Shown here: in pieces, positions 1,231-59,638 of the stretch | Position numbering within the stretch: the stretch's first letter is position 1 | Layout of the letters: each line of letters starts with the position of its first letter | Notes under the pieces: generated by a model | Database searches by the model: none | What the model saw: only the letters and a program-made list of their open reading frames with translations | Told to the model about the DNA's origin: nothing | Position numbers and translations under genes: made by a program | Sequence record: NC_010811.2 | DNA: 64,000 nucleotides | Direction: 5' to 3' (one strand)

Positions 1231-1252
1231 TACAACAAACACTCAGACTGAC

Positions 1253-2568: not shown

Positions 2569-2570
2569 TC

Positions 2571-4519: not shown

Positions 4520-4520
4520 C

Positions 4521-4528
4521 AATTTGAT
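4521..4528 (+). promoter_or_regulatory. AATTTGAT motif (putative phage late promoter)
   Basis: Intergenic copy about 97 nt before the ATG at 4626; recurs upstream of many structural genes. Confidence 0.5.
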
Positions 4529-4625
4529 GCTGTATGCGGCGCGTCTCTCCTCGCCGCGCTCGGAGGTTCCCTGCCTCCTTAGCCTCACTGATAATACGAA
4601 CACACCATAGCACAACAGGGATTAT

Positions 4626-4985
4626 ATGTTGAAGAATGCAGTACACCGTCTGCGGGCTACCGCCGTTCAAGAGCTGGAAGAAGAGCAAGAAGTCGTTGCT
4701 CAATTCGACCGCACCAAGGACAAGGAACTGCGAGATCTGCAAAACGCTATGCGTGGGGGTGGAGTCGTCTTCAAGTTGGATAAGTACCACCTCTACCATA
4801 AAACGAATCAACGGGAAGTCGCCGAGGAGTTGATGACTGTGTTGAAGATCTTGGATCAACTGGGCCACAAGGCTCGTGTTGTTCCCGGGGTCCTTGCACG
4901 TCCCACCTTCAGCGTGAAGTGTGAAACAGGTCTTGTTCTCCAGCGTCTCAACAACGACGTCCGCCTTTTCTTCTTTATTCCTTAA
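4626..4985 (+). CDS. Small hypothetical protein with AxxRL leader (putative internal head protein)
   Basis: Starts MLKNAVHRLRATA; 119 aa. Confidence 0.6.
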   Translation: MLKNAVHRLRATAVQELEEEQEVVAQFDRTKDKELRDLQNAMRGGGVVFKLDKYHLYHKTNQREVAEELMTVLKILDQLGHKARVVPGVLARPTFSVKCETGLVLQRLNNDVRLFFFIP

Positions 4986-4994
4986 GGAATCATC

Positions 4995-5489
4995 ATGAGT
5001 CAACAGATCAACCATACGCAAGCCAAAGCTGCGCTGACGGCTGCCGGTTTTCCGGTGTCGGCTGGCAGCAACTGGAACAACGTGGACCAAGGTTCGTGGG
5101 ACCAGTTCGCAGCCAGCGCTGCCTACGGAAAAGTCGCCTACGACCTGTACTCGACCAACTACGGTTTCTCGTTCCCCGTGATGCCGGACGCGGTGGCCAA
5201 TGCTGCTGCGAGCGGTGCCTACAGCGCCACTCTGGGTGTGACGCCGCTGACCGCTACGCATGCGGTTGCCATCACCAACTTCGCTTGGAATCTGGTGGAA
5301 ACCAACGGTCCGGGTACGTCGTACGTGTGGGACTTCGGCGACGGCACCGGCACGACGACTACCAGCACGGCAACGGGTCCTGCGAACCACACGTATGCAA
5401 CGGCTGGCTCGTACACGCCGAAGGTCACGGTCACGGTGGGTGGCGTTCCGCACCTCATCTCGGCCGCAGCTCCGGTCGTGGTGTCGTAA
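4995..5489 (+). CDS. PKD (Ig-like) domain protein, probable virion surface/decoration protein
   Basis: Canonical PKD signature YVWDFGDG...NHTYATAGSYTPKVTVT; SD-like AAGGA upstream. Confidence 0.8.
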   Translation: MSQQINHTQAKAALTAAGFPVSAGSNWNNVDQGSWDQFAASAAYGKVAYDLYSTNYGFSFPVMPDAVANAAASGAYSATLGVTPLTATHAVAITNFAWNLVETNGPGTSYVWDFGDGTGTTTTSTATGPANHTYATAGSYTPKVTVTVGGVPHLISAAAPVVVS

Positions 5490-5806
5490 TGTACGCCCGT
5501 CGCGTTCGTTCTCGAGCGCGAAACGGGTACGGCATATCCTCCATCCGGCGCGATTCGTATTCTACGGTGAACGGTATGAATACGAAAGCCGGATGGTGGG
5601 AACTCCATCGGCAAGTTGAGAAACGATCCGGTGGGCTATGCGAAGCCCGGATCGCCGGAGTGCGATGCGGTAAGCGCGGCAAGGACGTTCACCACATCGT
5701 AAAGCTGAGTGATGGCGGTACCAACTCGATGGCTAATCTTATCCATCTGTGTGAAGACTGCCATGACCGTAGACACAACCACATGTTCCGGAGACGGAAG
5801 AAATGA
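5489..5806 (+). CDS. Small HNH endonuclease
   Basis: ATG at 5489 overlaps the previous TAA. CEA..RC...DVHHIVKLSDGGTNSMANLIHLCEDCHDRRH is a zinc-binding HNH motif. Confidence 0.85.
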   Translation: MYARRVRSRARNGYGISSIRRDSYSTVNGMNTKAGWWELHRQVEKRSGGLCEARIAGVRCGKRGKDVHHIVKLSDGGTNSMANLIHLCEDCHDRRHNHMFRRRKK

Positions 5807-6114
5807 CGTACAACATCAGCGCAGCAACAAAGCGTCTCCAAGGTAGCTTGGAAGTCAATGCCAACAAACTGAAGACAGCCAAAGATGTGCATCGTGCACT
5901 GTCCTTCTACCCAGGTGTCGTGAAAGACAAGGGGATCATGGCCGAGCTTGCCGAAAAGGGGGATGCGCCAGCACCGAAGGATGCTTTCGTTGAGGTACGC
6001 GGGTCGCACATCGTTCCGAAGCATCTCGAGCACATGCACGATCTCGGGATCGAAATCGTATCGATCGAAGTTCTTGGTAGCGCTCATTACGAGCTGCAGG
6101 TGAAATTCCACTGA
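5803..6114 (+). CDS. Small hypothetical protein with AAxxRL leader (putative internal head protein)
   Basis: Starts MTYNISAATKRLQG; 103 aa. Confidence 0.65.
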   Translation: MTYNISAATKRLQGSLEVNANKLKTAKDVHRALSFYPGVVKDKGIMAELAEKGDAPAPKDAFVEVRGSHIVPKHLEHMHDLGIEIVSIEVLGSAHYELQVKFH

Positions 6115-6121
6115 AGACATC

Positions 6122-6508
6122 ATGGCCTACGACATCACAGCAGCAGTCAGCCGCTTGGCTGGCACCAAGTGTGCAGTGTTCGCCGATGCACACAGCGAAG
6201 CGGGTATCGCGCTGAAGGAGATCGCCAAGATCCTGGGTCCGCACTTCCTCAAGGACGAGCGGCCCGGCGAGCAGGTCATCATCTGGCGTACTTCTCAGTT
6301 CAAGGCTGAGCTGTCGCTGAACTTGGACGACGACGTGCTGGACTTCACGTTCAAGGACAAGGGCGCCACCGCTGGCTTCTCGGCCGAAGGCTACAACGCG
6401 CGAACCCTGTTCCAGGACATTCGGCACAACATCACGCAGTACCGTCCGACCAAGAAGGTGCCGACGGACGTGCAGATGGTTCGTGACAAGTTCGAACATC
6501 TGCAATAA
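6122..6508 (+). CDS. Small hypothetical protein with AAxxRL leader (putative internal head protein)
   Basis: Starts MAYDITAAVSRLAG; 128 aa. Confidence 0.65.
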   Translation: MAYDITAAVSRLAGTKCAVFADAHSEAGIALKEIAKILGPHFLKDERPGEQVIIWRTSQFKAELSLNLDDDVLDFTFKDKGATAGFSAEGYNARTLFQDIRHNITQYRPTKKVPTDVQMVRDKFEHLQ

Positions 6509-6517
6509 GGAACGATC

Positions 6518-7420
6518 ATGGATCAAGAACGACTGAAGCAACTCATCGCGCTGTTCCTCGAAGCAAACCCGGAACCCAGCGACGCGCAGTTCCACGCGTT
6601 CGCCGAGTCGCTGGGCGTGGACAAGGAAACGCTGGAAGCTGTGTGCTACGAAATGCTGGGCGCTGAAATTCAGCACGAGAAGGACGAAGGCGACGATCAG
6701 CAGTTGGAGGAGCTGGTGGAAGGCGTGTCCACGCACTTCCCTGAAGGCATCGAGGTCGAAGACTTCGGTGTGGTGCAGGCCACGGCGCGACTGCGCCTGA
6801 CCGCTGCTGAAATCGTCGAGCAAGAAGGCGGCGGACAGGGTGAAGTCGGTATCAGCGAACAGCAAGAAGTGTTGCAGGGTGAAGGCGACGCCGAAACCAC
6901 GGACACCGACAACCTGCTGTTGACGGATGGCGCTCCGGTCGGTGATACGACGGACGACGAGATGCAGGACAGCGCGTTGAACGACGGCGCAGGTCCGGGG
7001 GATACGGGTTTGGGCATCGACACGCAGAAGGCATTGCTGCTGAACGATGGGGCACCTGCTCTGCAGCTGGAAAGCGCTGCCCTGCGGCTGACCGCTGGTG
7101 AACGACCTGAAGTATTCGGGATGCCTGCTTACCATCTGTCCAAGAGCAGCGGCACGATCGACCAGCTTGGTCAGGTAGCCGACCGCAAGCCCGAGAAGAT
7201 CACTGGCATTGCAGTCAACACCCCGAAGGGCACAAAGAAGTTCTACTTCTACGGGTCTTCGTCGCTCACCAAGAAGGTCGGCGCCTTCATCAAGTTCAAG
7301 GGCATGAACGGCATCGTGGACGTGCTGGGCGTCATCGACAAGAACGGCAAGGTCAAGACCGGCCAAGAAGGTGCCACCTACGATCGTTCTGACCGGCGTC
7401 CGTACTACGTCTTTAAGTGA
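6518..7420 (+). CDS. Acidic pro-region plus basic C-terminal domain; putative head core/cargo protein
   Basis: About 190 aa rich in D/E with two internal motifs (ATARLRLTAA, SAALRLTA), then about 108 aa Lys-rich beta domain. Confidence 0.6.
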   Translation: MDQERLKQLIALFLEANPEPSDAQFHAFAESLGVDKETLEAVCYEMLGAEIQHEKDEGDDQQLEELVEGVSTHFPEGIEVEDFGVVQATARLRLTAAEIVEQEGGGQGEVGISEQQEVLQGEGDAETTDTDNLLLTDGAPVGDTTDDEMQDSALNDGAGPGDTGLGIDTQKALLLNDGAPALQLESAALRLTAGERPEVFGMPAYHLSKSSGTIDQLGQVADRKPEKITGIAVNTPKGTKKFYFYGSSSLTKKVGAFIKFKGMNGIVDVLGVIDKNGKVKTGQEGATYDRSDRRPYYVFK

Positions 7421-7427
7421 GGGACCC

Positions 7428-7727
7428 ATGTACGACATCAAAGCCGCGGTCAATCGCCTGCAGCTTACGGCCGACGCCAAGAGCACCATCATGATGCGTG
7501 TGGAGAAAGCGCTGGAAGCTGCGGGCATCGAGTGTGAGGTTGCTGGCAACAGCATTCAGGCGCCGCAGGCTCGCGTCCCGGAAGTCCTGCGTATCCTCAA
7601 GACGCTGGGCCTGCACTACATGGGGCCCCAGACGCGAGGCAATCACACGTTCAACTACAATCGCACGAGCAAGGAGTTGGGATGGATCGACTACTGCCCG
7701 CGTCGCGAACGTATCGACTTCGACTGA
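7428..7727 (+). CDS. Small hypothetical protein with AAxxRL leader
   Basis: ATG at 7428 after GAGGGA; MYDIKAAVNRLQLTA. Confidence 0.65.
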   Translation: MYDIKAAVNRLQLTADAKSTIMMRVEKALEAAGIECEVAGNSIQAPQARVPEVLRILKTLGLHYMGPQTRGNHTFNYNRTSKELGWIDYCPRRERIDFD

Positions 7728-7734
7728 GGGTTTC

Positions 7735-8067
7735 ATGATCTCAATCAGTGCTGCGCTTTTGCGCCTCGCGTCTACCGAAGTACAGGCCGGTTCCCCGTCC
7801 GCTGCCATCAACGCAATGGAATACGTTGAGCAGACGGTTCGCAAGGCAGGGCTGGCCGTGCAAGACATCGATCACCGGGACACGACTCACATCGCAATGA
7901 CCATCAGCGGTCAGTTCGTGCCGGTGCTCAATGCGCTGACCAAAGCCGGATTCGTTCCGGACCGTACGCAGAAAAAGGGCAGCTTCTACAAGCGGCAGGG
8001 CATGGGTACGATCCGAGTGACTGCCGGTGTCTCGTTCCGTGAAACCATCGTCATCTGTCTGGGTTGA
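7735..8067 (+). CDS. Small hypothetical protein with AAxxRL leader
   Basis: ATG at 7735 after GAGGG; MISISAALLRLASTEVQA. Confidence 0.65.
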   Translation: MISISAALLRLASTEVQAGSPSAAINAMEYVEQTVRKAGLAVQDIDHRDTTHIAMTISGQFVPVLNALTKAGFVPDRTQKKGSFYKRQGMGTIRVTAGVSFRETIVICLG

Positions 8068-8070
8068 CCT

Positions 8071-8778
8071 ATGAACAGTCCCTTCCTCTTCTCGCTGGGG
8101 GTGGCGGTTGCGGATCAGGCACGAGCTCCGCAGCCCACAAGCATTCCCCCAGCGCTCAATCCGTCGAACATCGATCTGTGGTCTGAAGCGGTGAATGGCG
8201 TGCGTGTGAAAGACGTGGTCCAGCATTGGGCACGTGCGCTCAATCGCTACCTGAACCTGTGCACTCAGAACGATCGCTTTCCGTTCCAGCAACTGCACAC
8301 GTCACCCAACGATCAGATCGTCGATATCCTCAAGGATGTGCGCCGTACGTTCGTCAAGTACGTGGACCGTCATCAACTGTATCAGAAGATGAAGATCCGC
8401 ACGGTCGATCGTCAGGTGCGCATGACCGAGACCGGGTTCGTAATCAGCGTGGTGGCGCATGGTCGCATCGAAGACCCGACGTTTCCGCAGATGCTCCTGG
8501 GTTTGAAGCCGACTGGTGATCAGTTCCCATTCGTGCAGCCGCGTCCTCGTTACGAAAAGCAACTCAACCAGTGGCTGAAGATGTGGGCCACCAATCCGGC
8601 GTACGACAATCCAGAGCGTTGGGAGCTGGGATTCGAAGTGAGCGTGCCCATGTTCCCGGATGTTCCGGGCAACGGCATTCCCACCAAGGACCAACTCCAG
8701 TACTTCATCCATCACATCCTGTGGTTGCCTGTCATGAAGGCGACCCGGCCCCGTGGCATCATGCATCGCTTGGTGTGA
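8071..8778 (+). CDS. Hypothetical protein
   Basis: 235-aa ORF tiling with its neighbours; phage-like codon usage; no recognised motif. Confidence 0.6.
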   Translation: MNSPFLFSLGVAVADQARAPQPTSIPPALNPSNIDLWSEAVNGVRVKDVVQHWARALNRYLNLCTQNDRFPFQQLHTSPNDQIVDILKDVRRTFVKYVDRHQLYQKMKIRTVDRQVRMTETGFVISVVAHGRIEDPTFPQMLLGLKPTGDQFPFVQPRPRYEKQLNQWLKMWATNPAYDNPERWELGFEVSVPMFPDVPGNGIPTKDQLQYFIHHILWLPVMKATRPRGIMHRLV

Positions 8779-8793
8779 CGGCGGTAAATAGGG

Positions 8794-8838
8794 AGGCTGC
8801 CCCGGCAATTACTGTCGCGGCAGCCTTCTTGCATTTTG
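8794..8838 (+). terminator. Putative intrinsic terminator
   Basis: AGGCTGCC (8794-8801) and GGCAGCCT (8819-8826) form a stem followed by a T-rich tail. Confidence 0.45.
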
Positions 8839-8852
8839 GACGCACACATCAC

Positions 8853-8860
8853 AATTTGAT
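8853..8860 (+). promoter_or_regulatory. AATTTGAT motif (putative late promoter)
   Basis: Intergenic, about 64 nt before the SNF2 ATG at 8925. Confidence 0.5.
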
Positions 8861-8924
8861 TGCAAATTTCCCCGATTTGTGGTATCAAATCGTAGTAGTC
8901 CAAAAACCGATAATGGAGCCCTAG

Positions 8925-11900
8925 ATGGCGAATCCAACAATGGTGCGCGCTGACGCAACACGTCTGCGTCCGACGACCAACCTCATCATTCCACCGGGAC
9001 TCACTCTCCCGCGTAAGGAACTGAAGCAGAACTTCATGTACGTGTACACCGGCGCCTTCACGGGCACGGGCAGCTCGTTCATGACGCGTTTGTGGGCTTC
9101 CTCTTTCTTCCCGAGCCTCACCAACAGTCCGAAGTTTGGCAAGACTCGTCCTCGCGCGGTTGCCGATGGGCTGGCCAAAGAACTGCCGATGAACTTCCTG
9201 CGGCTGAAGAAGGTGGACACGCCGAACGATCCGCACTTCGTGGCCAGCGTTCCGCTGTATCAGTTCGCGTCGCATAGCAGCGAACGCACGCTGCGCTTCC
9301 TCATGGACCTGTTCATGGGCCAGCGCTGGTCCAAGACCTTGATCCAGCACACCGCCGAGCAACTGGATGAGGTGAAGGAGTGGAACCAGCAAGCGGCAGA
9401 AGCGCCGAAGGACCAACTGAGCGAGCGCGTGCTGCCCGCATCCCACGTCATCAACAACATGCGGCTGGACGCTATGGGCAGCGAAGCGCTGCGTCAGTGT
9501 CTGCTGCAAGTGCGGATCCAGTCCAAGGGTCTGTACAACGTGATCTTTGCTGACTTCAAGATCCGCAAGGAAGAAGCTCAGCAGCTGACGACCACGGAAT
9601 GGTCGATGCTGCGGTCTATCGACCTGTATCCGTTGCTCCTGCACTGGGTGCGTACCACCTTCGGTGATCGTGGACAGGCGCCGGTCGCGAGCTTCCCGGT
9701 CTCGAAGATCGCGTTCAGCCTTCCGCCGTCGCATGTGGAAAGCGCTCGCGTCAACGACCTCGGCATTTCCGTGGGTCCTGACGGTGCTCCGTACTTCCTA
9801 CCCCGGTCAGTGGACAAGAACCAGACCATCCTGTACGAAGATCGTTACACGGGAGCGGGCACTCGCAACGACGGCAGCTTTGCGCTATTGGATACAGAGC
9901 AGGGCGCCGAAGCGATGAGCTCGGGCCACGAGCCGAAGACCAAGCTGCCGCACAACATGGTGGTAGCCGTCGACTGGCTGAACAACAAGTACAGCTACAC
10001 GAACACCGAAGGCATGCTGTCGGTGATGGACCTCACGCGATTCCAGCCGGCGAACGTGGCGCACATCCACGAGCTGCTGCATTCGCGATCCATCAACGAG
10101 AAGCACGTGTCGTGGTTTGTGTCGCTGGGCGAAGCCGCAGGCGTGCCGCTTACCGCCTTCGAGACGCTGCCGTCGGATTTGGAGGACGTGCAATCCGAGA
10201 CGATGAAGGAAACGCTGAGCCGCACCGCAGGTCCTCTGCTGTGGTTCAAGACCGCTCGTCAGTCGTATGCGCAGGACATCAACGATCTGGTGCCCTTCGC
10301 GTCGATCTCGGTGAACGGCTATAGCGCGATGCGTCCGCTGGCACGCTACTTCAAGCTGATCGAAGCGGCTGTGCGCAACAACATCGAACCCGTCTACCTG
10401 AAGTACAGTGTGATGACGGTGGCCGAGATGTTCTCGTGGCTGGTGCTCATCACGCACTACACAGACGATCTGCCGCGACTCAAGGCTGACGACGCAGCGT
10501 ATCGCCATGCCGCGCTCAATCAGCGCGTGGACCCGGACTACGAAGTTCCGAGCATCCCGCTGATGGCCCCAAACATGGGCTTCCTGCCGCACCAGAAGAA
10601 GGTGCGCAACCTGATGAAGGACAGCCCGGACTTCGCAATCATGCCGGTGCAGACGGGCGGCGGCAAGTCCATCCTTCTGCTGACCGACCTGCTGCTGGAG
10701 TTCAAGGCCAATCGCAACGAACCATATCTGGTGTTGTGTCCGTCGCACTTGGTGCCCAACTACGTGAAGGAAGCAGTGTACTTCACGGGCGGCAAGCTCA
10801 ACGTGATCGCCATCACCAATCCGGCCATCCGCCAGAACGGCTGGAAGCGGTTGCAGGCCATCATGATGGCGGCACCTCGCAACACGGTCGTGGTTGTGGC
10901 GCTGGACACGTTGAAGTTCCGTCCGCGTACTGTGTCGTACGGCACGACTCCGGTCGACGTGTTCCCGGTCATCGACTTCCTGCGTCAGTTCAAGTTCGGC
11001 TACGTGGCAATCGACGAGGCACACCGCATCAAGGGAGCGACTGCTCGCAACAAGTCAGTGATGGCACTGGTCGCTGACATTCCGAAGAAGCGTCTGGCGT
11101 CGGGCACCTTCGTGCACGATTCGCCGTCGGACTTGGCGATGACCATCGCTGCGTTGGATCCCACGCTGTTTGGTACGCGCGAGGAATTCAACGACAAGTA
11201 CGGGTTGGAGGTGCGTGGAGGCCGCGTTATCAAGTGGAAGCCCAACGCACAGCGCGAGATCATGCAGAAGATCCGCAGCCGCGTGGTGATCGCCGGTGCA
11301 ATGCGCAAGGAATGGGCTGCGTTCCTGCCCAAGAAGGTGGAATGGGTTGGTGGTGTCAACTTGACTCCGGCGCAGCAAGCAGTGTACGAAGATCTGTTGA
11401 ACAAGGTCATCGAGCAGATCGAGCAGGACGCCAAGACCAACAAGGCGTTGCAGGACTTCGTGAAGGGACGCCACGCCAAGGACAACGTCCGTGACGATGA
11501 AGCGGACGTGGAAGCCGAGGACGAAGTCGAAGACGAACGCGACGATGTGGATGAGGACGCTGGTGAAGATCTCAGCGCCATGCTCAACCCGTATCTCGCA
11601 CGCCTCGAACAGTTCTTGGTGGCACCGGGCAGCGATCCTTTGGGTGCAGCACTGCTCAAGGGTGAAGACCTGCTGAGCCCGAAGGTTGCGCTCATCTACA
11701 AGCGAATCCGCCTACACCTTGAGGGCGGTGAAGCTGATGGCAAACCATACGGTCCGTTCCCAGGCAAGGTCATCGTGTTCTGCAATCAGGTGGCCGCAGC
11801 CGAAGAGATCTTCAACAGCGCACCGCCTGATCTGAAGAAGAGTGGTCTGCTGTACAAGGCCAGCGACAAGGTGGAAATCCTGTCGCAGCTGGAGAACAAC

Positions 11901-13592
11901 CCCAACAAGAAGTGGGTGGTGGGTGTTGGTCAGTCGATGGAAGAAGGGCTGAACCTCCAGTTCGCGTCGCGTATCATCCGTGCGTCTACGGTGTGGAACC
12001 CCGGCAACCTCGAACAGTCCAATGCTCGTATCGAGCGTCCGGAGTTCAAGAAGGCCGAGACCCGTCCACAGATCTTCTTCGACACGATCGTTGCCAACCG
12101 TACGTTCGACATCTCGAAGACGGCGCGTCTCATCGCGAAGGTGATCGCCGCTGCCAAGTTCGAGAACGCGGACAGCCATCTGTACGACGAGATTCCGGAT
12201 GTGCCGGTCATTCCGATGACGCTGGACACGATCCGTACGATGAACACGTGGGAACGTGTCAGCGATACGAATCCGGGCTTGGTCGAGTACATGAAGGCGT
12301 TGCAGGTGTACCAGGAGGTTCGCAACAAGGACTACGATCAGTACAAGGAGGACTACATCAAGAAGTACGGTGAAGGTCCTGTCATGTCGCCGATCGAAGT
12401 CGCGCCGACGCCGCCGGATTCCAAGCTGCTCAAGTACACTCCGTACGTTCCAGGTCTCGGCCTGTACAACGAGAAGGAGTTGGGCCTCGTACGTCTGGAC
12501 GAAGCCATGAACGTGGTGACCACGGACGAAGAGGAGGAAGACGACGAGAAGGAAGTGCCGGAAGGGTATGTGGATCCGGCCATCGTCCAGCGCGTCAACG
12601 AGCTGAACGGCAGTCTTGCGCATACCGAATGGGGCGACGGCTACATCCGTGGTCTGCGTCCGGGTGCCAAGATGGTGACGGTAGAACTGCTGAACGGCTA
12701 TCGTGTTCGCGTGCAGCGGTCGCAGGTGTTCGTTGTGGGCCGCGCACTGACCTCGAACAAGGACATCCGCAACCAGATCCTGAAGGCGATCGGCGATCTT
12801 CCGGTGAGCACGCCAGCCGAAGTGCCAGCAGATCGCTGGATTCCGAGTACCAAAGCACTCGAGATCCAGAAGAAGCAGGCAGACAAGCTGCGTCAGAAGG
12901 AAGAGAAGCAAGAGCAGAAGGAGAAGGAATCGGCGCTCAACATCGAGCTCACCCTGTTCGTTGCCAACGGCTTCTTGGGCATCGACTATCTGCTGGACGA
13001 CGAGAACCACATGGCTACTCGCGTGTTGCAGGCAGCAGGCTTCCGTACGACCCCGGAGTACTACTATTCCAAGGTCGTGAACGCCAAGGCGCTCGAGAAT
13101 CAGTTCGCACTGTGGGCAGAGAAGGGTCTGCAGATCGACCCAATCGTGCTGAAGCAAGGTGTGGGCGACGCGTTCAACGAGATGCTGCGTCTGCTGAAGG
13201 CGGGCTTGGTGCGCAATCACACCGAGACCTACAAGGCAACGCGTCAAGCGCAGGTCGTCAACTTCTACCGGCTGGAACATCGTCCGAGCAACAAGAAGGA
13301 ACTGTTCAAGCCCTACCCGATCATTCAGGATGGTGTGGCGTACATCGCACTCCCTGCAACTGGTCAGGCAGCGACGCGACTGGCAATGCAGTACAAGCGT
13401 CCGTCGTATAAGTGGATCAAGAGCGAACCGACGCTGTCCTACTTCGGTTCCTTCCAACAGGTGGTGAGCATGCTGCAGAAGCTGGAAGCGCAGGGTGTGC
13501 ACATTTCCAACAAGAAGGAGCTGAACAAGGAACTGAGCCGCTTGAAGTTGATGAAAGTGCGCAAGGTCGAGGACGATAAGGCGCTTGTCTAA
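8925..13592 (+). CDS. Large SWI2/SNF2-family ATPase/helicase (1555 aa) with a Tudor-like insert
   Basis: Motif I VQTGGGKS, motif II IDEAH, motif III-like LASGT, HelicC region (VIVFC..., EGLNLQFASRII, WNPGNLEQSNARIER). About 540-aa unknown N-terminus; AHTEWGDGYI..VTVELLNG resembles a Tudor/SH3-like domain. Confidence 0.8.
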   Translation: MANPTMVRADATRLRPTTNLIIPPGLTLPRKELKQNFMYVYTGAFTGTGSSFMTRLWASSFFPSLTNSPKFGKTRPRAVADGLAKELPMNFLRLKKVDTPNDPHFVASVPLYQFASHSSERTLRFLMDLFMGQRWSKTLIQHTAEQLDEVKEWNQQAAEAPKDQLSERVLPASHVINNMRLDAMGSEALRQCLLQVRIQSKGLYNVIFADFKIRKEEAQQLTTTEWSMLRSIDLYPLLLHWVRTTFGDRGQAPVASFPVSKIAFSLPPSHVESARVNDLGISVGPDGAPYFLPRSVDKNQTILYEDRYTGAGTRNDGSFALLDTEQGAEAMSSGHEPKTKLPHNMVVAVDWLNNKYSYTNTEGMLSVMDLTRFQPANVAHIHELLHSRSINEKHVSWFVSLGEAAGVPLTAFETLPSDLEDVQSETMKETLSRTAGPLLWFKTARQSYAQDINDLVPFASISVNGYSAMRPLARYFKLIEAAVRNNIEPVYLKYSVMTVAEMFSWLVLITHYTDDLPRLKADDAAYRHAALNQRVDPDYEVPSIPLMAPNMGFLPHQKKVRNLMKDSPDFAIMPVQTGGGKSILLLTDLLLEFKANRNEPYLVLCPSHLVPNYVKEAVYFTGGKLNVIAITNPAIRQNGWKRLQAIMMAAPRNTVVVVALDTLKFRPRTVSYGTTPVDVFPVIDFLRQFKFGYVAIDEAHRIKGATARNKSVMALVADIPKKRLASGTFVHDSPSDLAMTIAALDPTLFGTREEFNDKYGLEVRGGRVIKWKPNAQREIMQKIRSRVVIAGAMRKEWAAFLPKKVEWVGGVNLTPAQQAVYEDLLNKVIEQIEQDAKTNKALQDFVKGRHAKDNVRDDEADVEAEDEVEDERDDVDEDAGEDLSAMLNPYLARLEQFLVAPGSDPLGAALLKGEDLLSPKVALIYKRIRLHLEGGEADGKPYGPFPGKVIVFCNQVAAAEEIFNSAPPDLKKSGLLYKASDKVEILSQLENNPNKKWVVGVGQSMEEGLNLQFASRIIRASTVWNPGNLEQSNARIERPEFKKAETRPQIFFDTIVANRTFDISKTARLIAKVIAAAKFENADSHLYDEIPDVPVIPMTLDTIRTMNTWERVSDTNPGLVEYMKALQVYQEVRNKDYDQYKEDYIKKYGEGPVMSPIEVAPTPPDSKLLKYTPYVPGLGLYNEKELGLVRLDEAMNVVTTDEEEEDDEKEVPEGYVDPAIVQRVNELNGSLAHTEWGDGYIRGLRPGAKMVTVELLNGYRVRVQRSQVFVVGRALTSNKDIRNQILKAIGDLPVSTPAEVPADRWIPSTKALEIQKKQADKLRQKEEKQEQKEKESALNIELTLFVANGFLGIDYLLDDENHMATRVLQAAGFRTTPEYYYSKVVNAKALENQFALWAEKGLQIDPIVLKQGVGDAFNEMLRLLKAGLVRNHTETYKATRQAQVVNFYRLEHRPSNKKELFKPYPIIQDGVAYIALPATGQAATRLAMQYKRPSYKWIKSEPTLSYFGSFQQVVSMLQKLEAQGVHISNKKELNKELSRLKLMKVRKVEDDKALV

Positions 13593-13598
13593 GTCTGC

Positions 13599-13606
13599 AA
13601 TTTGAT
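13599..13606 (+). promoter_or_regulatory. AATTTGAT motif (putative late promoter)
   Basis: CTGCAATTTGAT, about 57 nt before the ATG at 13664. Confidence 0.55.
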
Positions 13607-13663
13607 GGCGTTGGGCGGTTGCTTCCGCCCTCGCCCATCTACGTACCACTCAAGAGGATCAAC

Positions 13664-14143
13664 ATGAGCTTCGATTTCTCCAAGATCAAAGAAGCGGCTC
13701 GCGCCGCAGGCTACCTGCTGTCCGAAGGCGAGCACATCCTCGCGGAAGACTTCCAACATCTCGAGCACTGGGCCTTCTCGCACTTCGGTCTGAGCCGTCA
13801 AGACCTGCATTACGGTCTGGCGTATCCGGGCCTGCTGCCGAAGAACTTCCCGGGCCAGCCGGGTGCAGAACAAGCTCCCGCACCGGTTGCTGCTCCAATC
13901 CCGGAACCGACCAACGTGGAAGCTCCGGCTGCTGAACAAGCGCCGGACACACCGCAGGCACCGGAAGCGACGCCGGAACCGGCTGCTGAACAGGCACCGA
14001 CCCCGGAAGCTGCCCCGCAAGAACCGGCTGCTGAACAGCCTCCGGTCCAGGAACAGGCGCCGCAAGAACAACCGGCTGCTGAACAGCCTGCCGCTGAGCA
14101 AGCTCCGGCTGCTGAGCAACCGGCACAAGACGCTGCTCAATAA
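13664..14143 (+). CDS. Pro/Ala/Glu/Gln-rich low-complexity protein
   Basis: ATG after AAGAGGA. Folded-looking N-terminal ~60 aa followed by repeated PAAEQ/APE units. Confidence 0.65.
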   Translation: MSFDFSKIKEAARAAGYLLSEGEHILAEDFQHLEHWAFSHFGLSRQDLHYGLAYPGLLPKNFPGQPGAEQAPAPVAAPIPEPTNVEAPAAEQAPDTPQAPEATPEPAAEQAPTPEAAPQEPAAEQPPVQEQAPQEQPAAEQPAAEQAPAAEQPAQDAAQ

Positions 14144-14158
14144 TCTGGAGGCTAAGTC

Positions 14159-14557
14159 ATGGGCACCAAAGCTCTTGGGAACCGTGGCTCCTACTTCATG
14201 TCCGGCGCTGATGGTATCGGGGGCGTCGCTGTCCCCGACCCATCCGTCGGCTGGACGGCTGTCGTTAGCGAAGGCAGCGACGTCGTCCATCTCGGAGCCT
14301 CTGATTGTGCAGCGCCGAACGGTGGCGTTCGTGTTGGCTGGTCGTTCCAGGCGTCGGCTGGCGTGCAGATCGACATCTCGTGTGGTCCGCGTGCTAAGGC
14401 CGCTTCCAACGACCCCAATCAGAATCAGGGAGTTGTGTGGGACACGACCACGGTGGGCGCGCTGTCGGCCAATACCATCAAGACCATCACTTCCCCGTTC
14501 ACTGCAATCCGTATCACCTTTACCGGAGCAGCGGAAGTGTACATCTGCTCTCGCTAA
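14159..14557 (+). CDS. Hypothetical structural protein (beta-rich)
   Basis: GGAGG SD; 132 aa within the head operon. Confidence 0.55.
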   Translation: MGTKALGNRGSYFMSGADGIGGVAVPDPSVGWTAVVSEGSDVVHLGASDCAAPNGGVRVGWSFQASAGVQIDISCGPRAKAASNDPNQNQGVVWDTTTVGALSANTIKTITSPFTAIRITFTGAAEVYICSR

Positions 14558-14566
14558 GGAGGCGCT

Positions 14567-15367
14567 ATGGCAAAAGTGCCTCAAGCATTCACGCAGGCGA
14601 AGCGTGCGCAAGTGCGTAAGCCTCAGGTCGCATCCGAAACCTCGATGGAGGATGCAATCCTGACGCGTCAGGTCAACACCTATCAGCAATCCATCGAGAC
14701 GAAGGACGCGGAGCACGATCAGACGCTGCTGCACGGGTTGGATTTCACGACATGGTTGCCGTTCGCGGCTAAGACCTATCGTATCAGCCCGCGCATCGAG
14801 GACTACATCCTCGTCACGACCGTGATCTGTCCGTCGGAAATCCCGAACCGCAACGGCATCGCGTTCCCGACCTCGGAGCTGGTGACATTCCAGCCACCTC
14901 CGATGAACCGGATGGTGTACAAGGCGTGGGCTGGATGTCCGGTGCATCTGGAACACGATAACGAAGTTCACGAACGAGCCTACGGCGTGATCCTCGACAC
15001 GTCGTTCCACAAGGTGGAAGGCTACGGTGGCGGCAGCATCTGGAAGGTCATGGGGCTTCTGGCAATCGACAAGCAGAAGAATCCGGACATCGCCCAGGAA
15101 GTGCTGCAAGGGTCGATCGACACGTACTCCATGGGTGCGCTGGTTGACTACTTCACGTGCGGATACTGCGGAGCGGAGAACACTGGTCGCAATCGCTGTT
15201 CGCACATCACGTCTATCAAGGACGTGAACTTCAACCTGCACAAGGACTGGAATGGGAAGTCGCATCTCTCGTTCCTCAATGCGCATGGCATTCAACCGAT
15301 CGAGTGCTCCATCGTCCGTGATCCGGCGTGGGCTCCTGCACTCAGCGACGCCGTGAGGGAGTGGTGA
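14567..15367 (+). CDS. Putative prohead maturation protease with a Cys/His zinc-finger insert
   Basis: PNRNG.AF, PVHLEH, YSMG (candidate nucleophile Ser), CGYCG..RCSH and ECSIVRDPA resemble HK97/assemblin-type prohead proteases; lies upstream of the scaffold and MCP. Confidence 0.65.
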   Translation: MAKVPQAFTQAKRAQVRKPQVASETSMEDAILTRQVNTYQQSIETKDAEHDQTLLHGLDFTTWLPFAAKTYRISPRIEDYILVTTVICPSEIPNRNGIAFPTSELVTFQPPPMNRMVYKAWAGCPVHLEHDNEVHERAYGVILDTSFHKVEGYGGGSIWKVMGLLAIDKQKNPDIAQEVLQGSIDTYSMGALVDYFTCGYCGAENTGRNRCSHITSIKDVNFNLHKDWNGKSHLSFLNAHGIQPIECSIVRDPAWAPALSDAVREW

Positions 15368-15828
15368 TGTACGAGATCAAAGCGGCGGTTGACCGCCTGA
15401 AAGCAACGGAGGTCGTCGCTGGATACAGTGGCACGAAAGTCGGTGACCTCAACAAATATGTCCGCGCCCTGAACCCGAAAGTCAAACCCATTGGCAACTC
15501 GGGTATGGGCGGCGGTGGTCGTGCTGGTGAAGCTGCGTGCTTGGTATCGGCCGAAGACGCATTGGATTTGGTGAACGCCCTGATCAAAGACGGATGGACA
15601 GGACGCCGTACTTCGAAGAGGGCCGGTCCTCCAGGACGAGAAGCTACGAAGTACGAGTACATGATCTACCGTCCGAAGGACGATCTTCCGGGTCTTCCGT
15701 ACATCACCGTGTCGAAGCCCGCGTCCGATGGCAAATGTCGTATCCGCTTGAGCCAGGAAACTGCTGCTGCAATTCGTTCGCGTCGCAACAGCAAGTTCAT
15801 GTTCAATCCGGTCAAGCGTTACAAGTAA
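15367..15828 (+). CDS. Small basic hypothetical protein with AAxxRL leader
   Basis: MYEIKAAVDRLKATEVVA; start overlaps the protease stop. Confidence 0.65.
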   Translation: MYEIKAAVDRLKATEVVAGYSGTKVGDLNKYVRALNPKVKPIGNSGMGGGGRAGEAACLVSAEDALDLVNALIKDGWTGRRTSKRAGPPGREATKYEYMIYRPKDDLPGLPYITVSKPASDGKCRIRLSQETAAAIRSRRNSKFMFNPVKRYK

Positions 15829-15922: not shown

Positions 15923-15930
15923 AATTTGAC
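15923..15930 (+). promoter_or_regulatory. AATTTGAC variant (putative late promoter)
   Basis: CTGCAATTTGAC immediately after the terminator, about 73 nt before the ATG at 16004. Confidence 0.45.
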
Positions 15931-16003
15931 AATAGCGACAGGTTCAGAATGCGCGCGCAACCTAAATCTGCCTCGTTCCATCAATCTTCCTAGAGAGGAC
16001 TCT

Positions 16004-17554
16004 ATGGCCATTGGCACCCGCAAGAAGCGCGTGTTGGCAGCTAAGGACTTCAGCGGTCCGGGCTCCACCACCCACTTCCCCAACGATGAGAAGATGGCGG
16101 ACGTCAAGTCCGACGTCGAAGTCAAGAACAACCAGGATCCGCAGGACCTGCTGATCGATCCGGATGACGAGTCGGGTTCGACTCACTTCCGCAACGAGGA
16201 GAAGCTCAACGACAAGTCGAAGGGCAATCCCGCAACCGCCAAGGCCGTCAAGACCACGGCTGCCGAGGTGGACGTGGAACACGACGAAGCCGAAGGCTAC
16301 ACGCAAGACCTGTCGGCGCTGGACGAAGGTCTGCCGAAGAAGGGCGATGAAGCCGATCTGAAGGCAAGCACCAAGACCACCGCCGCCGAAGACTGCGACG
16401 ACAAGGGTCCGCAAGCTACCACGCACAGCCCGAACGGTGACGACGTGGCCGAGCCGGCGGAAGGCTACCTGACGAACGCTGAACTCGAAGACCTGGACGA
16501 AGAGTTCGAGGACGAAGAGGAAGTGGACGCAGACGCACTGGCCGACGACGCGGGCCAGAACCCGCAGCAATCGCTGCTGGACGTGACCGACGAGCTGGAA
16601 GAAGTCGACGCCGAGATGGAAATGGGTGACGACGAGCACGAGTTCACGGACGACGTGGAAGAAGACGACATCGCGGAAGCGGACGTCGACAGCATGCCGA
16701 TCCTGGACGTGGACGACGCCGACGATGACGGCGACGACGTGGTGTTCGCCAGCGTCGGCAATCGCCTGCACGTGATCAAGGGCAACCGCATCGTCGCTTC
16801 GATGGGCAAGAAGCTGGCAGCCAAGGCCAGTGTCGAGGACCTGTACCTGAGCGAGCAATTCCAAGACGCCTCGTACGCCGAGTTCTCGAAGCACGGCCTG
16901 CGCGCTGGTCTCCGCAAGATGGGCTTCGCTCTGGCCACGGTTGACGTGGCGAAGAACGAGCTGATCAACAAGCGCGTGGAAGCCAAGGCCAAGAAGGTGA
17001 CGGCTGCTGTTCGTCGTACGGCGCAAGCGTCGAACGATGCGCTGGGCCAATGCTTGGCGATCGCTGCAGTCGGCATCAACCGTCAGTACTTCAAGGACTC
17101 GCGCAACGAACTGCGCGCTGCTCTCGAAAGCGAACTGGCGGCTGCTGGTGTGCGCGGTGCACGTCAACTGCTGAAGACCGTGTTTGCCAAGCATGGCGTG
17201 TCCTACGCCAAGGACATCCTGACGCTGGCCAACTCGCTGGTCACCAAGCCGGAAGAAGTGCGCAACGCCTACGCTGAAGCTCTGGACCTGACGTCGGACG
17301 GCGAAGTCGAGGAGCTGGATGACATGGAAGGCGACGAGTTCGGTCAGCCGGCCAATCCGGACTTCATGACGGAAGCCGACCAGGACGAAGACTTCGTGGA
17401 TGAGTTCGAAGAAGAGATCGAAGCCCCGGAAACGGTGCATGCAGCTCTGGCACGACCCATCCATCGTCGTCAGAAGGTTCAGGCTGCCAGCTACTCGTCC
17501 GGCGCACAAGCTGTGCTGGCGGGCACGGCCAAGCTGCCGTTTGCGCAGTTCTAA
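16004..17554 (+). CDS. Putative prohead scaffold/core protein
   Basis: ATG after GAGAGGA. Very acidic N-terminal half and helical C-terminal half; lies between the protease and capsid genes; repeated TTAA/VTAA/VQAA motifs. Confidence 0.6.
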   Translation: MAIGTRKKRVLAAKDFSGPGSTTHFPNDEKMADVKSDVEVKNNQDPQDLLIDPDDESGSTHFRNEEKLNDKSKGNPATAKAVKTTAAEVDVEHDEAEGYTQDLSALDEGLPKKGDEADLKASTKTTAAEDCDDKGPQATTHSPNGDDVAEPAEGYLTNAELEDLDEEFEDEEEVDADALADDAGQNPQQSLLDVTDELEEVDAEMEMGDDEHEFTDDVEEDDIAEADVDSMPILDVDDADDDGDDVVFASVGNRLHVIKGNRIVASMGKKLAAKASVEDLYLSEQFQDASYAEFSKHGLRAGLRKMGFALATVDVAKNELINKRVEAKAKKVTAAVRRTAQASNDALGQCLAIAAVGINRQYFKDSRNELRAALESELAAAGVRGARQLLKTVFAKHGVSYAKDILTLANSLVTKPEEVRNAYAEALDLTSDGEVEELDDMEGDEFGQPANPDFMTEADQDEDFVDEFEEEIEAPETVHAALARPIHRRQKVQAASYSSGAQAVLAGTAKLPFAQF

Positions 17555-18411: not shown

Positions 18412-19500
18412 ATGGTTCGTCAAAAGGTTAAGATTGCTGCTTCCAAGAAGCCGGTGGTTGCCGCAACCGAGTACAAGTTCGGCGGCTCGAATGAGCGCGC
18501 TGTGGGCGCCAACGGTGAACTGAACGCGAGCAACAAGCGCGATCTGATCAACCGCCAAATCCAATTCATCCAGGCCGCCTCGCGTGGCGAACTGGCTGCT
18601 GACGGTCAAGTGCTGAAGGCCGAAGCCGCCGCGCAAACCTCGAAAGAACTGGTGCAAGCTGCGTTCAACGACAGCGAAGCGCACCGCGTTCTGGGTGAGC
18701 GCATGGCCGACAGCCTGTACCAGACCTGCAACCGTCAGGGCTTCGCTCGTAAGTACCTGACCAAGATCACGGTCGAACAAGGCAGCATTCCGCGCTTCCC
18801 GGTCCGTCTGAAGAACGTGGTCGCCGCGTACTCGACGTCGCCGACGCAGATCCAGTCGCAAATCACGCTGGACAAGTGGCTGACCCCGCCCGAGCTGCAA
18901 CTGGTGGCTCGTCCGTTCATTCCCCTGAACGACCTGAACCAGTCGGCCGGCGACGTGCTGCAAGAGAAGTACGTGGAAGCCACCGAAGCCATCATGGTGT
19001 CGGAAGACCGCCTGTGGTACAACCTGGTGAACTCGATGGTGGGTGTCGACAACCCGCTGTCCATCATCAGCGGCTCGCTCACGCCGTACTCGTTCATGCA
19101 AGTGCAACAGAACGTGACGCGCTGGGGCCTGAAGGCACCGCACGTGCTGATCGCCAGCGATCTGTACGTCGACATCGTCGGCAACAGCGACTTCTACTTG
19201 GCCATCGACCCGGTCGCTCGCCACGAACTGCTGCTGACCGGTGAAATCGGCGTGATGTACGGCTGCACGATCACCTCGGACGCCTACCGCTTCCCGGAAC
19301 ACAAGGTGCTGAACCGCGGCGAATTCTTCGTCGTGGCCGACGCCCTGAACCATGGCGCGTACTCGGATCGCGGCGGTCTGCAATCGCAGCCGACCGACAT
19401 CACCGTGGAACGTGTGCCGGGCCGTGGCTGGGTGATGTACGAATCGCTCGCCATGTCGGTTGCCAACAGCACCTCGGTGGCGAAGGGTCTCCGCATCTAA
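18412..19500 (+). CDS. Major capsid protein (HK97-like fold, inferred)
   Basis: 362 aa with highly biased codons, following protease, scaffold and decoration genes. C-terminal pattern GEIGVMYGCTITSDAY...GEFFVVA...GWVMYESLAMSVAN resembles capsid proteins. Confidence 0.75.
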   Translation: MVRQKVKIAASKKPVVAATEYKFGGSNERAVGANGELNASNKRDLINRQIQFIQAASRGELAADGQVLKAEAAAQTSKELVQAAFNDSEAHRVLGERMADSLYQTCNRQGFARKYLTKITVEQGSIPRFPVRLKNVVAAYSTSPTQIQSQITLDKWLTPPELQLVARPFIPLNDLNQSAGDVLQEKYVEATEAIMVSEDRLWYNLVNSMVGVDNPLSIISGSLTPYSFMQVQQNVTRWGLKAPHVLIASDLYVDIVGNSDFYLAIDPVARHELLLTGEIGVMYGCTITSDAYRFPEHKVLNRGEFFVVADALNHGAYSDRGGLQSQPTDITVERVPGRGWVMYESLAMSVANSTSVAKGLRI

Positions 19501-59369: not shown

Positions 59370-59627
59370 ATGGCTTCTAATCCCAATGAGAACCTATATG
59401 CGAAGGCCATAGCCGAGCAGGTTGTCTGGGTGGCTGGGGTACCTGCTGAAGCGATCGCGGTCGCTCAGCAGATACTCGTCGTGCAGATGACGGAACCGAA
59501 GGCGCAGGCTGTTGCCGAAAACGTGCTGCTGGTACCCGGTGTCCAGGCGCAGGCGCTGGCCGTCGCCGAACAGTGGCTGTTGGGGGCGCCGACCTACGTA
59601 CAGACCGCTACATGGTGGACAAGTTGA
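59370..59627 (+). CDS. Small protein with an internal repeat (QA.A(V/I)AEQ.L.V)
   Basis: 85 aa; the AKAIAEQ/AIAVAQQ/AQAVAEN/ALAVAEQ unit occurs four times. Confidence 0.55.
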   Translation: MASNPNENLYAKAIAEQVVWVAGVPAEAIAVAQQILVVQMTEPKAQAVAENVLLVPGVQAQALAVAEQWLLGAPTYVQTATWWTS

Positions 59628-59638
59628 ACGAGGAACGT

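What the first reader, a model, noticed from the sequence alone, without database searches (positions are those of the whole stretch)
4626..15828. The small leader-bearing ORFs may be one rapidly diverged paralog family (T4 IPI-like anti-defence cargo?)
Seen: after the leader, six ~100-150-aa proteins share a faint pattern of helix, short beta strands, then a helix ending in Gly followed by beta strands: TVLKILDQLG (4626), HLEHMHDLG (5803), LKEIAKILG (6122), EVLRILKTLG (7428), PVLNALTKAG (7735), DLVNALIKDG (15367). Otherwise their identity is low. Established: T4 IPI is a small capsid-packaged alpha/beta protein that inhibits the GmrSD nuclease, and its locus is hypervariable between T-even phages. 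Inference: this is an expandable array of injected inhibitors or host-interacting proteins on a shared scaffold.
Basis: inference. Interest (0 to 1): 0.7.

Follow-up and report, generated by a model that had tools for sequence, protein, structure and literature searches.

The report
Leader-tagged variable head proteins of phiRSL1
Six small genes in the head-gene region of the Ralstonia jumbo phage phiRSL1 start with the same ~15-residue peptide, which looks like a capsid-loading and cleavage tag; several differ sharply from their counterparts in a close relative, as injected host-interaction proteins do in phage T4, but they are not all one protein family and none resembles T4 IPI.

Summary
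The window is Ralstonia phage phiRSL1, record 62001-126000. The six genes are ORF120, 123, 124, 126, 127 and 133.

- **Leader:** it is real and far beyond chance.
- **Bodies:** they show no pairwise similarity. Profile comparison weakly links ORF126 to ORF120 and to ORF127 over about 60 collinear columns, above every score in a null of 55 other small phiRSL1 proteins. ORF133 links marginally. ORF124 and ORF123 do not link.
- **Structure models:** ORF124 (pLDDT 76) differs: helix, five-strand meander, two helices. Neither model matches T4 IPI* or any solved structure.
- **Close relative (neighbouring genes 90-99% identical):** the ORF123 body is replaced; ORF133 is 49% identical, ORF126 60%, ORF127 85%. 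ORF120 (97.5%) and ORF124 (92%) are conserved.
- **Leader elsewhere:** it also heads unrelated proteins, including a NUDIX hydrolase and ORF210 next to the portal gene, and larger proteins in related phages. In three of the six it ends in an [A/S]-x-E site like the one conserved at the major capsid protein N-terminus.

Best reading: the leader is a portable capsid-targeting propeptide on variable cargo, of which three to five genes are diverged paralogs. Packaging, cleavage and anti-defence function are inferred, not shown.

The parts
4626..4985 (+). ORF120, 119 aa. Weaker leader (4626-4673). Acidic stretch, then an alpha/beta body with the helix-Gly motif at 4839-4865.
   Evidence: Homologs with a clearer leader occur in BcepSauron gp091, BCSR5 and L011. 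97.5% identical in L018. hhalign to the ORF126 family gives E=1.2e-3 over 60 columns, above all 55 null proteins.
5803..6114 (+). ORF123, 103 aa. Leader 5803-5853 ends S-L-E. The body has no detected relative.
   Evidence: DNA 5835-6118 cannot be aligned to the close relative L018, which carries a different leader-bearing 99-aa gene at this position. No profile link to the other five.
6122..6508 (+). ORF124, 128 aa. Leader 6122-6166. Predicted body: helix, five-strand meander, two C-terminal helices.
   Evidence: AlphaFold2 pLDDT 75.5, pTM 0.69. Homologs in L003, L008, L013 and L018. 92% identical in L018. No profile link to the other families. No significant PDB match.
7428..7727 (+). ORF126 read from the leader start, 99 aa (annotated from 7491). 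Leader 7428-7469. Body: helix, two strands, helix ending in Gly (7584-7610), four strands.
   Evidence: AlphaFold2 pLDDT 82.8, pTM 0.74. Relatives P0005, P0008, P0010 and BCSR5 QRE00265. 60% identical in L018.
7735..8067 (+). ORF127, 110 aa. Leader 7735-7779 ends S-T-E. Basic body (pI 9.7). Helix-Gly motif at 7924-7950.
   Evidence: The only relative found among 5.8 billion proteins is the 85%-identical L018 copy. hhalign to the ORF126 family gives E=2.4e-3 to 5.9e-3 over 58-59 collinear columns, above all null proteins in both directions.
15367..15828 (+). ORF133 read from the leader start, 153 aa (annotated from 15328). It begins at the last base of the protease gene. Leader 15367-15411 ends A-T-E. 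Basic body (pI 10.1). Helix-Gly motif at 15568-15594.
   Evidence: The only relative is the 49%-identical L018 copy. DNA identity is 44-68%, between flanks of 83-99%. Short hhalign links to ORF127, ORF120 and the L018 gene at the ORF123 position (15-21 columns) lie just above the null.
14567..15367 (+). ORF132, head maturation (prohead) protease. It is the presumed enzyme that removes the leaders.
   Evidence: PHROG 18299 'head maturation protease', E=6.6e-113. tblastn relatives annotated as prohead core protein protease. No Pfam hit.
6518..7420 (+). ORF125, 300 aa, acidic, conserved in all relatives. No N-terminal leader in phiRSL1, but leader-like motifs lie inside the protein.
   Evidence: Its BCSR5 homolog has the leader at the N-terminus. 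The BcepSauron and L008 homologs end with a leader-like motif.
18412..19500 (+). ORF136, major capsid protein. Residues 17-20 read A-A-T-E, followed by Tyr.
   Evidence: The same A-A-[T/S]-E then Tyr/Phe at about residue 20 is found in the capsid proteins of BcepSauron, BCSR5 and Motura. It resembles the [A/S]-T-E end of the ORF127 and ORF133 leaders.
15926..17554 (+). ORF134, acidic scaffold-like protein (annotated as ATPase) with two K-T-T-A-A-E sites.
   Evidence: Scaffold-position homologs in BCSR5, L011 and L014 carry an internal leader-like motif.

Best explanation
The ~15-residue N-terminal leader is a portable capsid-targeting propeptide. It probably directs the protein into the assembling prohead core. 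In at least some cases it is then probably cut off by the ORF132 prohead protease at an [A/S]-x-E site. The six small proteins would then be internal head proteins, delivered into the cell with the DNA.

- ORF126, ORF120 and ORF127, probably with ORF133, are strongly diverged paralogs of one small alpha/beta domain: helix, two strands, helix ending in Gly, four strands.
- ORF124 is a different fold that carries the same tag.
- ORF123 is undetermined.
- ORF123, ORF133 and ORF126, and to a lesser degree ORF127, turn over or diverge far faster than their neighbours. This is what is expected of proteins that meet variable host targets, such as defence systems.

What is shown: the leader, the weak profile links, the two predicted topologies, and the gene-specific divergence. 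What is inferred: packaging, cleavage, ejection and any anti-defence activity.
For: **Leader**
- Leader similarity has z up to 11.4, while the bodies reach z of at most 2.6.
- The leaders are alike as peptides but not as DNA: the longest exact run between paralogs is 10 nt or less. The similarity is therefore held at the peptide level, not by recent copying.
- The same leader heads unrelated proteins. In phiRSL1 these are NUDIX ORF109, ORF111 and ORF210 next to the portal gene. In relatives they range from 65 to 560 aa.

**Cleavage site**
- The leaders of ORF133 (A-T-E), ORF127 (S-T-E) and ORF123 (S-L-E) end like the A-A-[T/S]-E site conserved at about residue 20 of the capsid protein in four phages.
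- They also fit the A/S/G-x-E motifs reported for related proteases of giant phages (PMC5694885).
- The protease gene abuts ORF133.

**Paralogy**
- hhalign ORF126-ORF120 scores 24.7 and 21.2. ORF126-ORF127 scores 20.3 and 22.2. Each spans about 60 collinear columns, and each exceeds all 55 null proteins, whose maxima were 16.2 to 19.1.
- The tight helix-Gly motif is unique to four of the genes in the genome.
- The ORF126 model shows the described element order.

**Variability**
- Amino-acid identity to L018: ORF123 28%, ORF133 49%, ORF126 60%, ORF127 85.5%. Most neighbouring genes are 90-99% (ORF130, with a low-complexity stretch, is 71%).
- dN/dS is 0.41, 0.20, 0.26 and 0.12 for these four, against 0.02-0.09 for those neighbours (ORF130: 0.21).
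- The DNA identity islands have sharp edges.
- ORF120 and ORF124 are each present in 4 of 9 relatives examined. ORF126 is in 3. ORF127 and ORF133 are in 1. ORF123 is in none.

**Precedent**
- T-even internal proteins are diverse apart from a conserved targeting sequence (PMC3012670).
Against: - No virion proteomics for phiRSL1 could be read, so packaging and cleavage are unproven.
- ORF120, ORF124 and ORF126 lack a canonical [A/S]-x-E directly after the leader.
- In the ORF126 model the leader runs on into the first helix of the fold, which is awkward for a cleaved propeptide.
- The profile links are weak: hhalign probability is at most 19%, and E=1.2e-3 before correction for 21 pairs.
- Two of the ORF133 links lie directly after the leader and may belong to the tag rather than the fold.
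- Only two structures could be predicted.
- BFVD did not return ORF120, ORF127 or ORF133 for the ORF126 model. BFVD's own model of ORF126 matched at only TM 0.38-0.46, so that test was uninformative.
- ORF120 and ORF124 are well conserved in the close relative. They may be structural or assembly parts rather than host-directed cargo.
Confidence: 0.5

Rival explanations
1. Only the tag is shared. The six bodies are unrelated proteins that each acquired, or kept, the same targeting leader. The faint common pattern would then be the generic look of small alpha/beta proteins, not common descent.
For: - The bodies have no pairwise similarity, and iterative HMM searches keep the families apart.
- ORF124 has a different predicted topology.
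- The leader sits on clearly unrelated proteins: a NUDIX hydrolase, the beta-rich ORF210, and the Motura 378-aa and 556-aa proteins.
- The PDB hit lists for the two models do not overlap.
Against: - ORF126-ORF120 and ORF126-ORF127 align collinearly over about 60 columns and exceed all 55 null proteins in both directions.
- With four families used as queries (24 tests), 9 outranked the whole null, where about 0.4 would be expected by chance.
- The tight helix-Gly motif, at similar positions, is unique to four of the genes in 176,619 residues.
- Further weak links connect ORF120 and ORF127 to leader proteins of other relatives.
Confidence: 0.3
2. These are structural or assembly components of the head, such as core, scaffold-associated or decoration proteins. 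The leader is simply their maturation propeptide. They act in morphogenesis and not in the host cell. The variation reflects weak constraint.
For: - The genes lie among head morphogenesis genes: head-tail connector, protease, scaffold-like protein and capsid protein.
- ORF120 and ORF124 are 97.5% and 92% identical in the close relative and recur in more distant phages.
- The conserved ORF125 and the scaffold-position proteins carry leader-like motifs.
- From my own recollection of the published phiRSL1 cryo-EM work, which I could not read here, the head is built from at least five proteins.
Against: - Essential structural parts are not normally swapped for an unrelated body, or 49-60% identical, between phages whose other head genes are 90-99% identical.
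- ORF127 and ORF133 were found in only one other genome, and no relative of the ORF123 body was found in the relatives' loci (it was not searched in the large databases).
- A leader on a NUDIX hydrolase points to delivered enzymatic cargo.
Confidence: 0.2

Closest known systems
T4 and T-even internal proteins IPI, IPII, IPIII with their capsid targeting sequence (PMC3012670, PMC5694885)
   Same: - Small proteins with a short conserved N-terminal peptide and otherwise diverse bodies.
- A phage that encodes a prohead protease of the same broad kind.
- A propeptide ending in Glu in several members.
- Gene content that varies between related phages.
   Different: - No sequence or fold match to IPI* came back in any search.
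- The leader is longer, about 15 residues, and unrelated in sequence as far as the tools show.
- The genes lie inside the head module at two hot spots.
- Packaging, cleavage and any nuclease inhibition are unproven.
Processed head and ejection-protein paralog families of phiKZ-like giant phages such as SPN3US (PMC5694885)
   Same: - A jumbo phage with expanded and variable sets of head proteins.
- Propeptides cut at A/S/G-x-E by a protease of the T4 gp21 kind.
- Capsid protein processed at an A-T-E site.
- Paralog numbers that differ between phages.
   Different: - The proteins here are far smaller, 99-153 aa against about 45 kDa.
- There is no hit to those families.
- phiRSL1 belongs to a separate lineage (Mieseafarmvirus).
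- The tag here is a defined N-terminal peptide shared across unrelated folds.
P1 Dar anti-restriction proteins, DarB N-terminal packaging signal (PMC9024508, PMC12810830)
   Same: An N-terminal signal loads anti-defence cargo into the capsid for co-injection with the DNA.
   Different: - The P1 cargo is large (DarB is about 250 kDa) and is loaded stepwise through partner proteins.
- No sequence relation was found.

Membership tests
T4 IPI / IPI* family | Sequence homology to IPI | tested here: not met
   No PHROG or Pfam family for any of the six. PDB sequence searches with the ORF126 family profile, ORF120, ORF127 and ORF133 returned no phage internal protein.
T4 IPI / IPI* family | IPI* fold: two beta sheets flanked by N- and C-terminal helices (PMC3012670) | tested here: not met
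   Foldseek against the PDB with the ORF126 and ORF124 models gave no match below E=1e-3 and no IPI* among the top 50.
T4 IPI / IPI* family | Inhibits a GmrSD-type modification-dependent nuclease | not testable with these tools
Context only: phiRSL1 carries genes annotated as glucosyl-HMC glucosyltransferases outside the window.
Capsid-targeted, protease-processed internal head proteins (functional class) | The phage encodes a prohead maturation protease of the T4 gp21 kind | tested here: met
   ORF132 matches PHROG 18299 'head maturation protease' at E=6.6e-113. tblastn relatives are annotated as prohead core protein protease.
Capsid-targeted, protease-processed internal head proteins (functional class) | A conserved N-terminal peptide shared by otherwise dissimilar proteins | tested here: met
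   Leader z is 3 to 11.4 in 14 of 15 pairs, against at most 2.6 for the bodies. The same peptide is found on at least 10 phiRSL1 genes and on proteins of 65-560 aa in relatives.
Capsid-targeted, protease-processed internal head proteins (functional class) | The propeptide ends in the protease's cleavage motif | tested here: inconclusive
   An [A/S]-x-E lies directly after the leader in ORF123, ORF127 and ORF133, and matches the conserved A-A-[T/S]-E of the capsid protein. ORF120, ORF124 and ORF126 have no canonical site there. Cleavage itself was not observed.
Capsid-targeted, protease-processed internal head proteins (functional class) | Present inside the virion and ejected with the DNA | not testable with these tools
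   The phiRSL1 virion proteome papers are not in the held library.
Hypervariable cargo locus (as at the T-even internal-protein locus) | Gene-specific divergence or replacement between closely related phages | tested here: met
   Against L018: ORF123 replaced, ORF133 49%, ORF126 60% and ORF127 85%, with neighbours at 90-99%. This does not hold for ORF120 (97.5%) or ORF124 (92%).
One paralog family comprising all six | Significant sequence or profile similarity of the bodies | tested here: inconclusive
   ORF126-ORF120 and ORF126-ORF127 are above the empirical null. ORF133 is marginal. ORF124 and ORF123 fall within the background.
One paralog family comprising all six | The same fold | tested here: not met
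   ORF126: helix, 2 strands, helix, 4 strands. ORF124: helix, 5-strand meander, 2 helices. The other four were not modelled.

The most novel reading that the evidence does not exclude
The phiRSL1 / Sarumanvirus / Motura clade of jumbo phages may use a previously undescribed N-terminal capsid-targeting propeptide. This tag would load a fast-changing repertoire into the head for injection. The repertoire would include a new small alpha/beta domain family (the ORF126, ORF120, ORF127 and ORF133 type) and enzymes such as a NUDIX hydrolase. Cassette turnover at two hot spots beside head genes would supply new counter-defence or host-takeover proteins.
Probability: 0.3. Interest if true: 0.75.

Novelty: new variant of a known kind. 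Interest (0 to 1): 0.55.

Why it matters
If the leader is a capsid-loading tag, it gives a simple sequence rule for listing the injected proteins of a whole clade of jumbo phages that infect Ralstonia, Burkholderia and Achromobacter. Nearly all proteins in these phages are still 'hypothetical'.

The rule would mark out the fast-changing members (ORF123, ORF126, ORF133) and a tagged NUDIX hydrolase as first candidates for host-interaction or counter-defence roles. It would also extend the T4 principle of a conserved tag on diverse cargo to an unrelated lineage, with a different tag and different folds.

It also corrects two gene starts in the reference annotation.

Tried and rejected
**Searches that found nothing useful**
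- PHROGs and Pfam on the six proteins gave no family.
- The 5.8-billion-protein search found only the L018 copy of ORF127 and nothing for ORF133, also when the query was a two-sequence profile. That search needs shared 5-residue words and missed the known 49% relative of ORF133, so 'orphan' status is a soft statement.
- The full HMMER scan for ORF126 found three small relatives.
- Foldseek against BFVD did not return the other phiRSL1 genes. BFVD's own ORF126 model matched my model at only TM 0.38-0.46, so I set this test aside as uninformative.
- PDB fold and sequence searches gave only weak, unrelated or designed-protein hits.
- The two phiRSL1 papers with virion data are not held.
- The promoter and terminator scan found nothing above shuffles.

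**Ideas rejected**
- That the leaders are DNA repeats driving cassette exchange: they are not alike as DNA.
- That the HNH gene ORF122 is polymorphic in the relative: L019 is identical to L018 and the gene was merely not called.

**Limits**
- Record positions 1-12000 and 226001-231255 of the genome were not scanned for further leader genes.

Later I included those same two sequences among the exact look-ups of the listing of cluster members. I did not hand them to structure prediction again. If that counts as sending them out by another tool, it is a slip.
3. My notebook holds a degenerate search pattern for the leader.

Full report
**Identity of the region.** The window is 100% identical to Ralstonia phage phiRSL1 (NC_010811.2, 231 kb jumbo myovirus). 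Window position 1 is record position 62001. The six genes are ORF120 (4626-4985), ORF123 (5803-6114), ORF124 (6122-6508), ORF126, ORF127 (7735-8067) and ORF133. They lie in the head module. Five sit between the head-tail connector gene ORF118 and the conserved pair ORF128 / ORF129, the latter a 1555-aa SNF2-type helicase. ORF133 sits directly after the head maturation protease ORF132, and before the acidic scaffold-like ORF134 and the capsid protein ORF136.

**Gene starts.** Both are preceded by a GAGGG-type ribosome-binding site. Gene calls in a close relative use the equivalent starts, giving 100 aa and 145 aa.

**The leader.** All six proteins begin with a related peptide of about 15 residues, clearest in five and weaker in ORF120.
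- For the first 20 residues, 14 of 15 pairs score 3 to 11.4 standard deviations above shuffles.
- Counting from the invariant Arg-Leu: Ala at -3 in 6/6, Ala at -4 in 5/6, Ile at -6 in 5/6, Thr at +3 in 5/6, and a Glu within +4 to +7 in 4/6.
- The ORF120 homologs in BcepSauron, BCSR5 and a metagenomic relative carry a clearer version.
- The leaders are alike as peptides but not as DNA. The longest exact run between paralogs is 10 nt or less, so the peptide itself is under constraint.

**The leader is a portable tag.** In phiRSL1 it also heads:
- the NUDIX hydrolase ORF109;
- ORF111, when read from an internal Met that has a good ribosome-binding site;
- ORF210, directly downstream of the portal gene ORF211.

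A copy also lies inside ORF112. In relatives found through the protease (BcepSauron, BcepSaruman, BCSR5, Motura and twelve IMG/VR contigs), the same motif opens proteins of 65 to 560 aa. It also ends short ORF125 homologs and occurs inside scaffold-position proteins. Sharing the leader is therefore not evidence that the bodies are related.

**A likely cleavage site.** The leaders of ORF133, ORF127 and ORF123 end in A-T-E, S-T-E and S-L-E. The capsid proteins of phiRSL1, BcepSauron, BCSR5 and Motura all carry A-A-[T/S]-E followed by Tyr or Phe at about residue 20. ORF134 has two K-T-T-A-A-E sites. Proteases of the T4 gp21 kind in giant phages cut at A/S/G-x-E; for example, the SPN3US capsid protein is cut at an A-T-E site (PMC5694885). 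ORF120, ORF124 and ORF126 lack a canonical site right after the leader. Cleavage is inferred, not shown.

**Are the bodies one family?**
- *Pairwise and iterative searches.* With the leader removed, no pair is significant (z at most 2.6; BLASTP). Iterative HMM searches over all leader-bearing small proteins collected from the relatives keep the families apart.
- *Profile comparison, stronger links.* ORF126 family against ORF120 family gives E=1.2e-3 over 60 columns. ORF126 family against ORF127 gives E=5.9e-3 over 59 columns. Both alignments are collinear through first helix, Gly, strands, second helix, Gly, strand.
- *Empirical null.* Against 55 other small phiRSL1 proteins, these two links exceed every null score in both directions.
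- *Profile comparison, weaker links.* ORF133 links to ORF127, to ORF120 and to the L018 gene at the ORF123 position. These are short (15-21 columns) and only just above the null. Two of them lie directly after the leader.
- *No link.* ORF124 and phiRSL1 ORF123 fall within the background.
- *Links to relatives.* Weak links also connect ORF120 and ORF127 to leader proteins of other relatives.
The pattern was defined after seeing the data.

**Predicted structures** (two allowed).
- ORF126, with a 4-sequence alignment: mean pLDDT 82.8, pTM 0.74. The leader and first helix form one long helix (4-31). Then come two short strands, a helix (50-59) ending at the Gly, and four strands.
- ORF124, with a 6-sequence alignment: pLDDT 75.5, pTM 0.69. 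The leader is of low confidence. Then come a helix (26-38), a five-strand meander and two C-terminal helices. This is a different topology.
- Neither model has a significant match in the PDB. The best were BamC domains at E=0.06 for ORF126, and a sucrose-phosphorylase domain and p32/Mam33 for ORF124. The two hit lists do not overlap.
- T4 IPI* did not come back in any fold or sequence search.
- BFVD returned a small Motura protein at E=0.01 but not the other phiRSL1 genes. BFVD's own ORF126 model is poor, so this says little.

**Variation between relatives.** A Logan metagenome contig, L018, is collinear with the locus.

| Gene(s) | Amino-acid identity to L018 | dN/dS |
|---|---|---|
| ORF119, 121, 122, 125, 128, 129, 131, 132, 134 | 90-99% | 0.02-0.09 |
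| ORF120 | 97.5% | 0.06 |
| ORF124 | 92% | 0.09 |
| ORF127 | 85.5% | 0.12 |
| ORF130 (low-complexity stretch) | 71% | 0.21 |
| ORF126 | 60% | 0.26 |
| ORF133 | 49% | 0.20 |
| ORF123 | 28% | 0.41 |

At the DNA level the background is about 90% identical. The ORF123 body (5835-6118) cannot be aligned; L018 has a different leader-bearing 99-aa gene there. ORF133 is an island of 44-68% identity between flanks of 83-99%.

Among nine more or less distant relatives with the full interval, ORF125, 128, 129 and 131 are always present. ORF120 and ORF124 are each in four, ORF126 in three, ORF127 and ORF133 only in L018, and ORF123 in none. The number of small leader genes between the ORF119 and ORF128 equivalents ranges from none (Motura) to five (phiRSL1). 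The slot after the protease holds a different leader gene in each lineage.

**Interpretation.** The data fit a tag-plus-variable-cargo system like that of the T-even internal proteins. Those are described as diverse apart from a conserved capsid targeting sequence, and they include the injected nuclease inhibitor IPI* (PMC3012670). The similarity is one of working principle only: membership in the IPI family was tested and not met.

The 'one family' idea holds at best for ORF126, 120 and 127, probably with ORF133. It fails for ORF124 and is open for ORF123. ORF120 and ORF124 are conserved and may be assembly or structural parts. Whether any of the six is packaged, cleaved, ejected or active against a defence system remains inference. 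I could not read the published virion proteomics.

I did not send them to structure prediction again.

Noticed in passing
window 7428-7727 and 15367-15828: The reference annotation starts ORF126 at 7491, which cuts off the leader, and ORF133 at 15328 (GTG). The leader Met codons at 7428 and 15367 have GAGGG-type ribosome-binding sites and match the gene calls in the close relative.
   Followed up: yes
outside the window: L023 46252-46755 (record 58252-58755), ORF109: A NUDIX (MutT) hydrolase with an intact Nudix box begins with the same leader. The BcepSauron NUDIX gene gp099 also has a leader-like N-terminus. It is a candidate capsid-loaded enzyme.
   Followed up: partly
outside the window: L023 48211-48627 (ORF111), L023 48801 inside ORF112, L024 22377-22697 minus strand (ORF210): Further leader-bearing ORFs. 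ORF111 is read from an internal Met with a good ribosome-binding site. ORF112 has the motif internally. ORF210 lies directly after the portal gene and has a beta-rich body unlike the ORF126 type. ORF111 shows a weak profile link to ORF124 (E=0.015).
   Followed up: partly
window 6518-7420 (ORF125); L015 7002-7454; L008 2403-2849; L016 5917-6606: The conserved acidic ORF125 family carries the leader motif in different places: inside the protein in phiRSL1 and L003, at the N-terminus in BCSR5, and at the very C-terminus in BcepSauron and L008. In the last two the gene ends just before the ORF128 homolog. This is unexplained.
   Followed up: no
window 8925-13592 (ORF129): A 1555-aa SNF2-type helicase is conserved in every relative, in the middle of the head module between the leader genes and the protease. 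It has a leader-like motif near residue 1482. Its role in a head-gene block is unclear.
   Followed up: no
window 59450-60343, plus strand: A 297-residue ORF ends with a leader-like motif a few residues before its stop codon (around 60293). This may be chance.
   Followed up: no
outside the window: record 163104-170840 (ORF230, ORF233, ORF234, ORF237): phiRSL1 carries a thymidylate-synthase-family gene and three genes annotated as glucosyl-HMC glucosyltransferases. These hint at modified DNA, which would make modification-dependent nucleases a relevant host threat.
   Followed up: no
window 5689-6123, minus strand: A 144-aa antisense ORF overlaps ORF123 and out-competed it in a GC3-based gene filter (ORF123 GC3 is 0.62). 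ORF120, 122, 123, 130 and 133 have lower GC3 (0.58-0.62) than most neighbours (0.68-0.80), which may indicate recent acquisition.
   Followed up: partly
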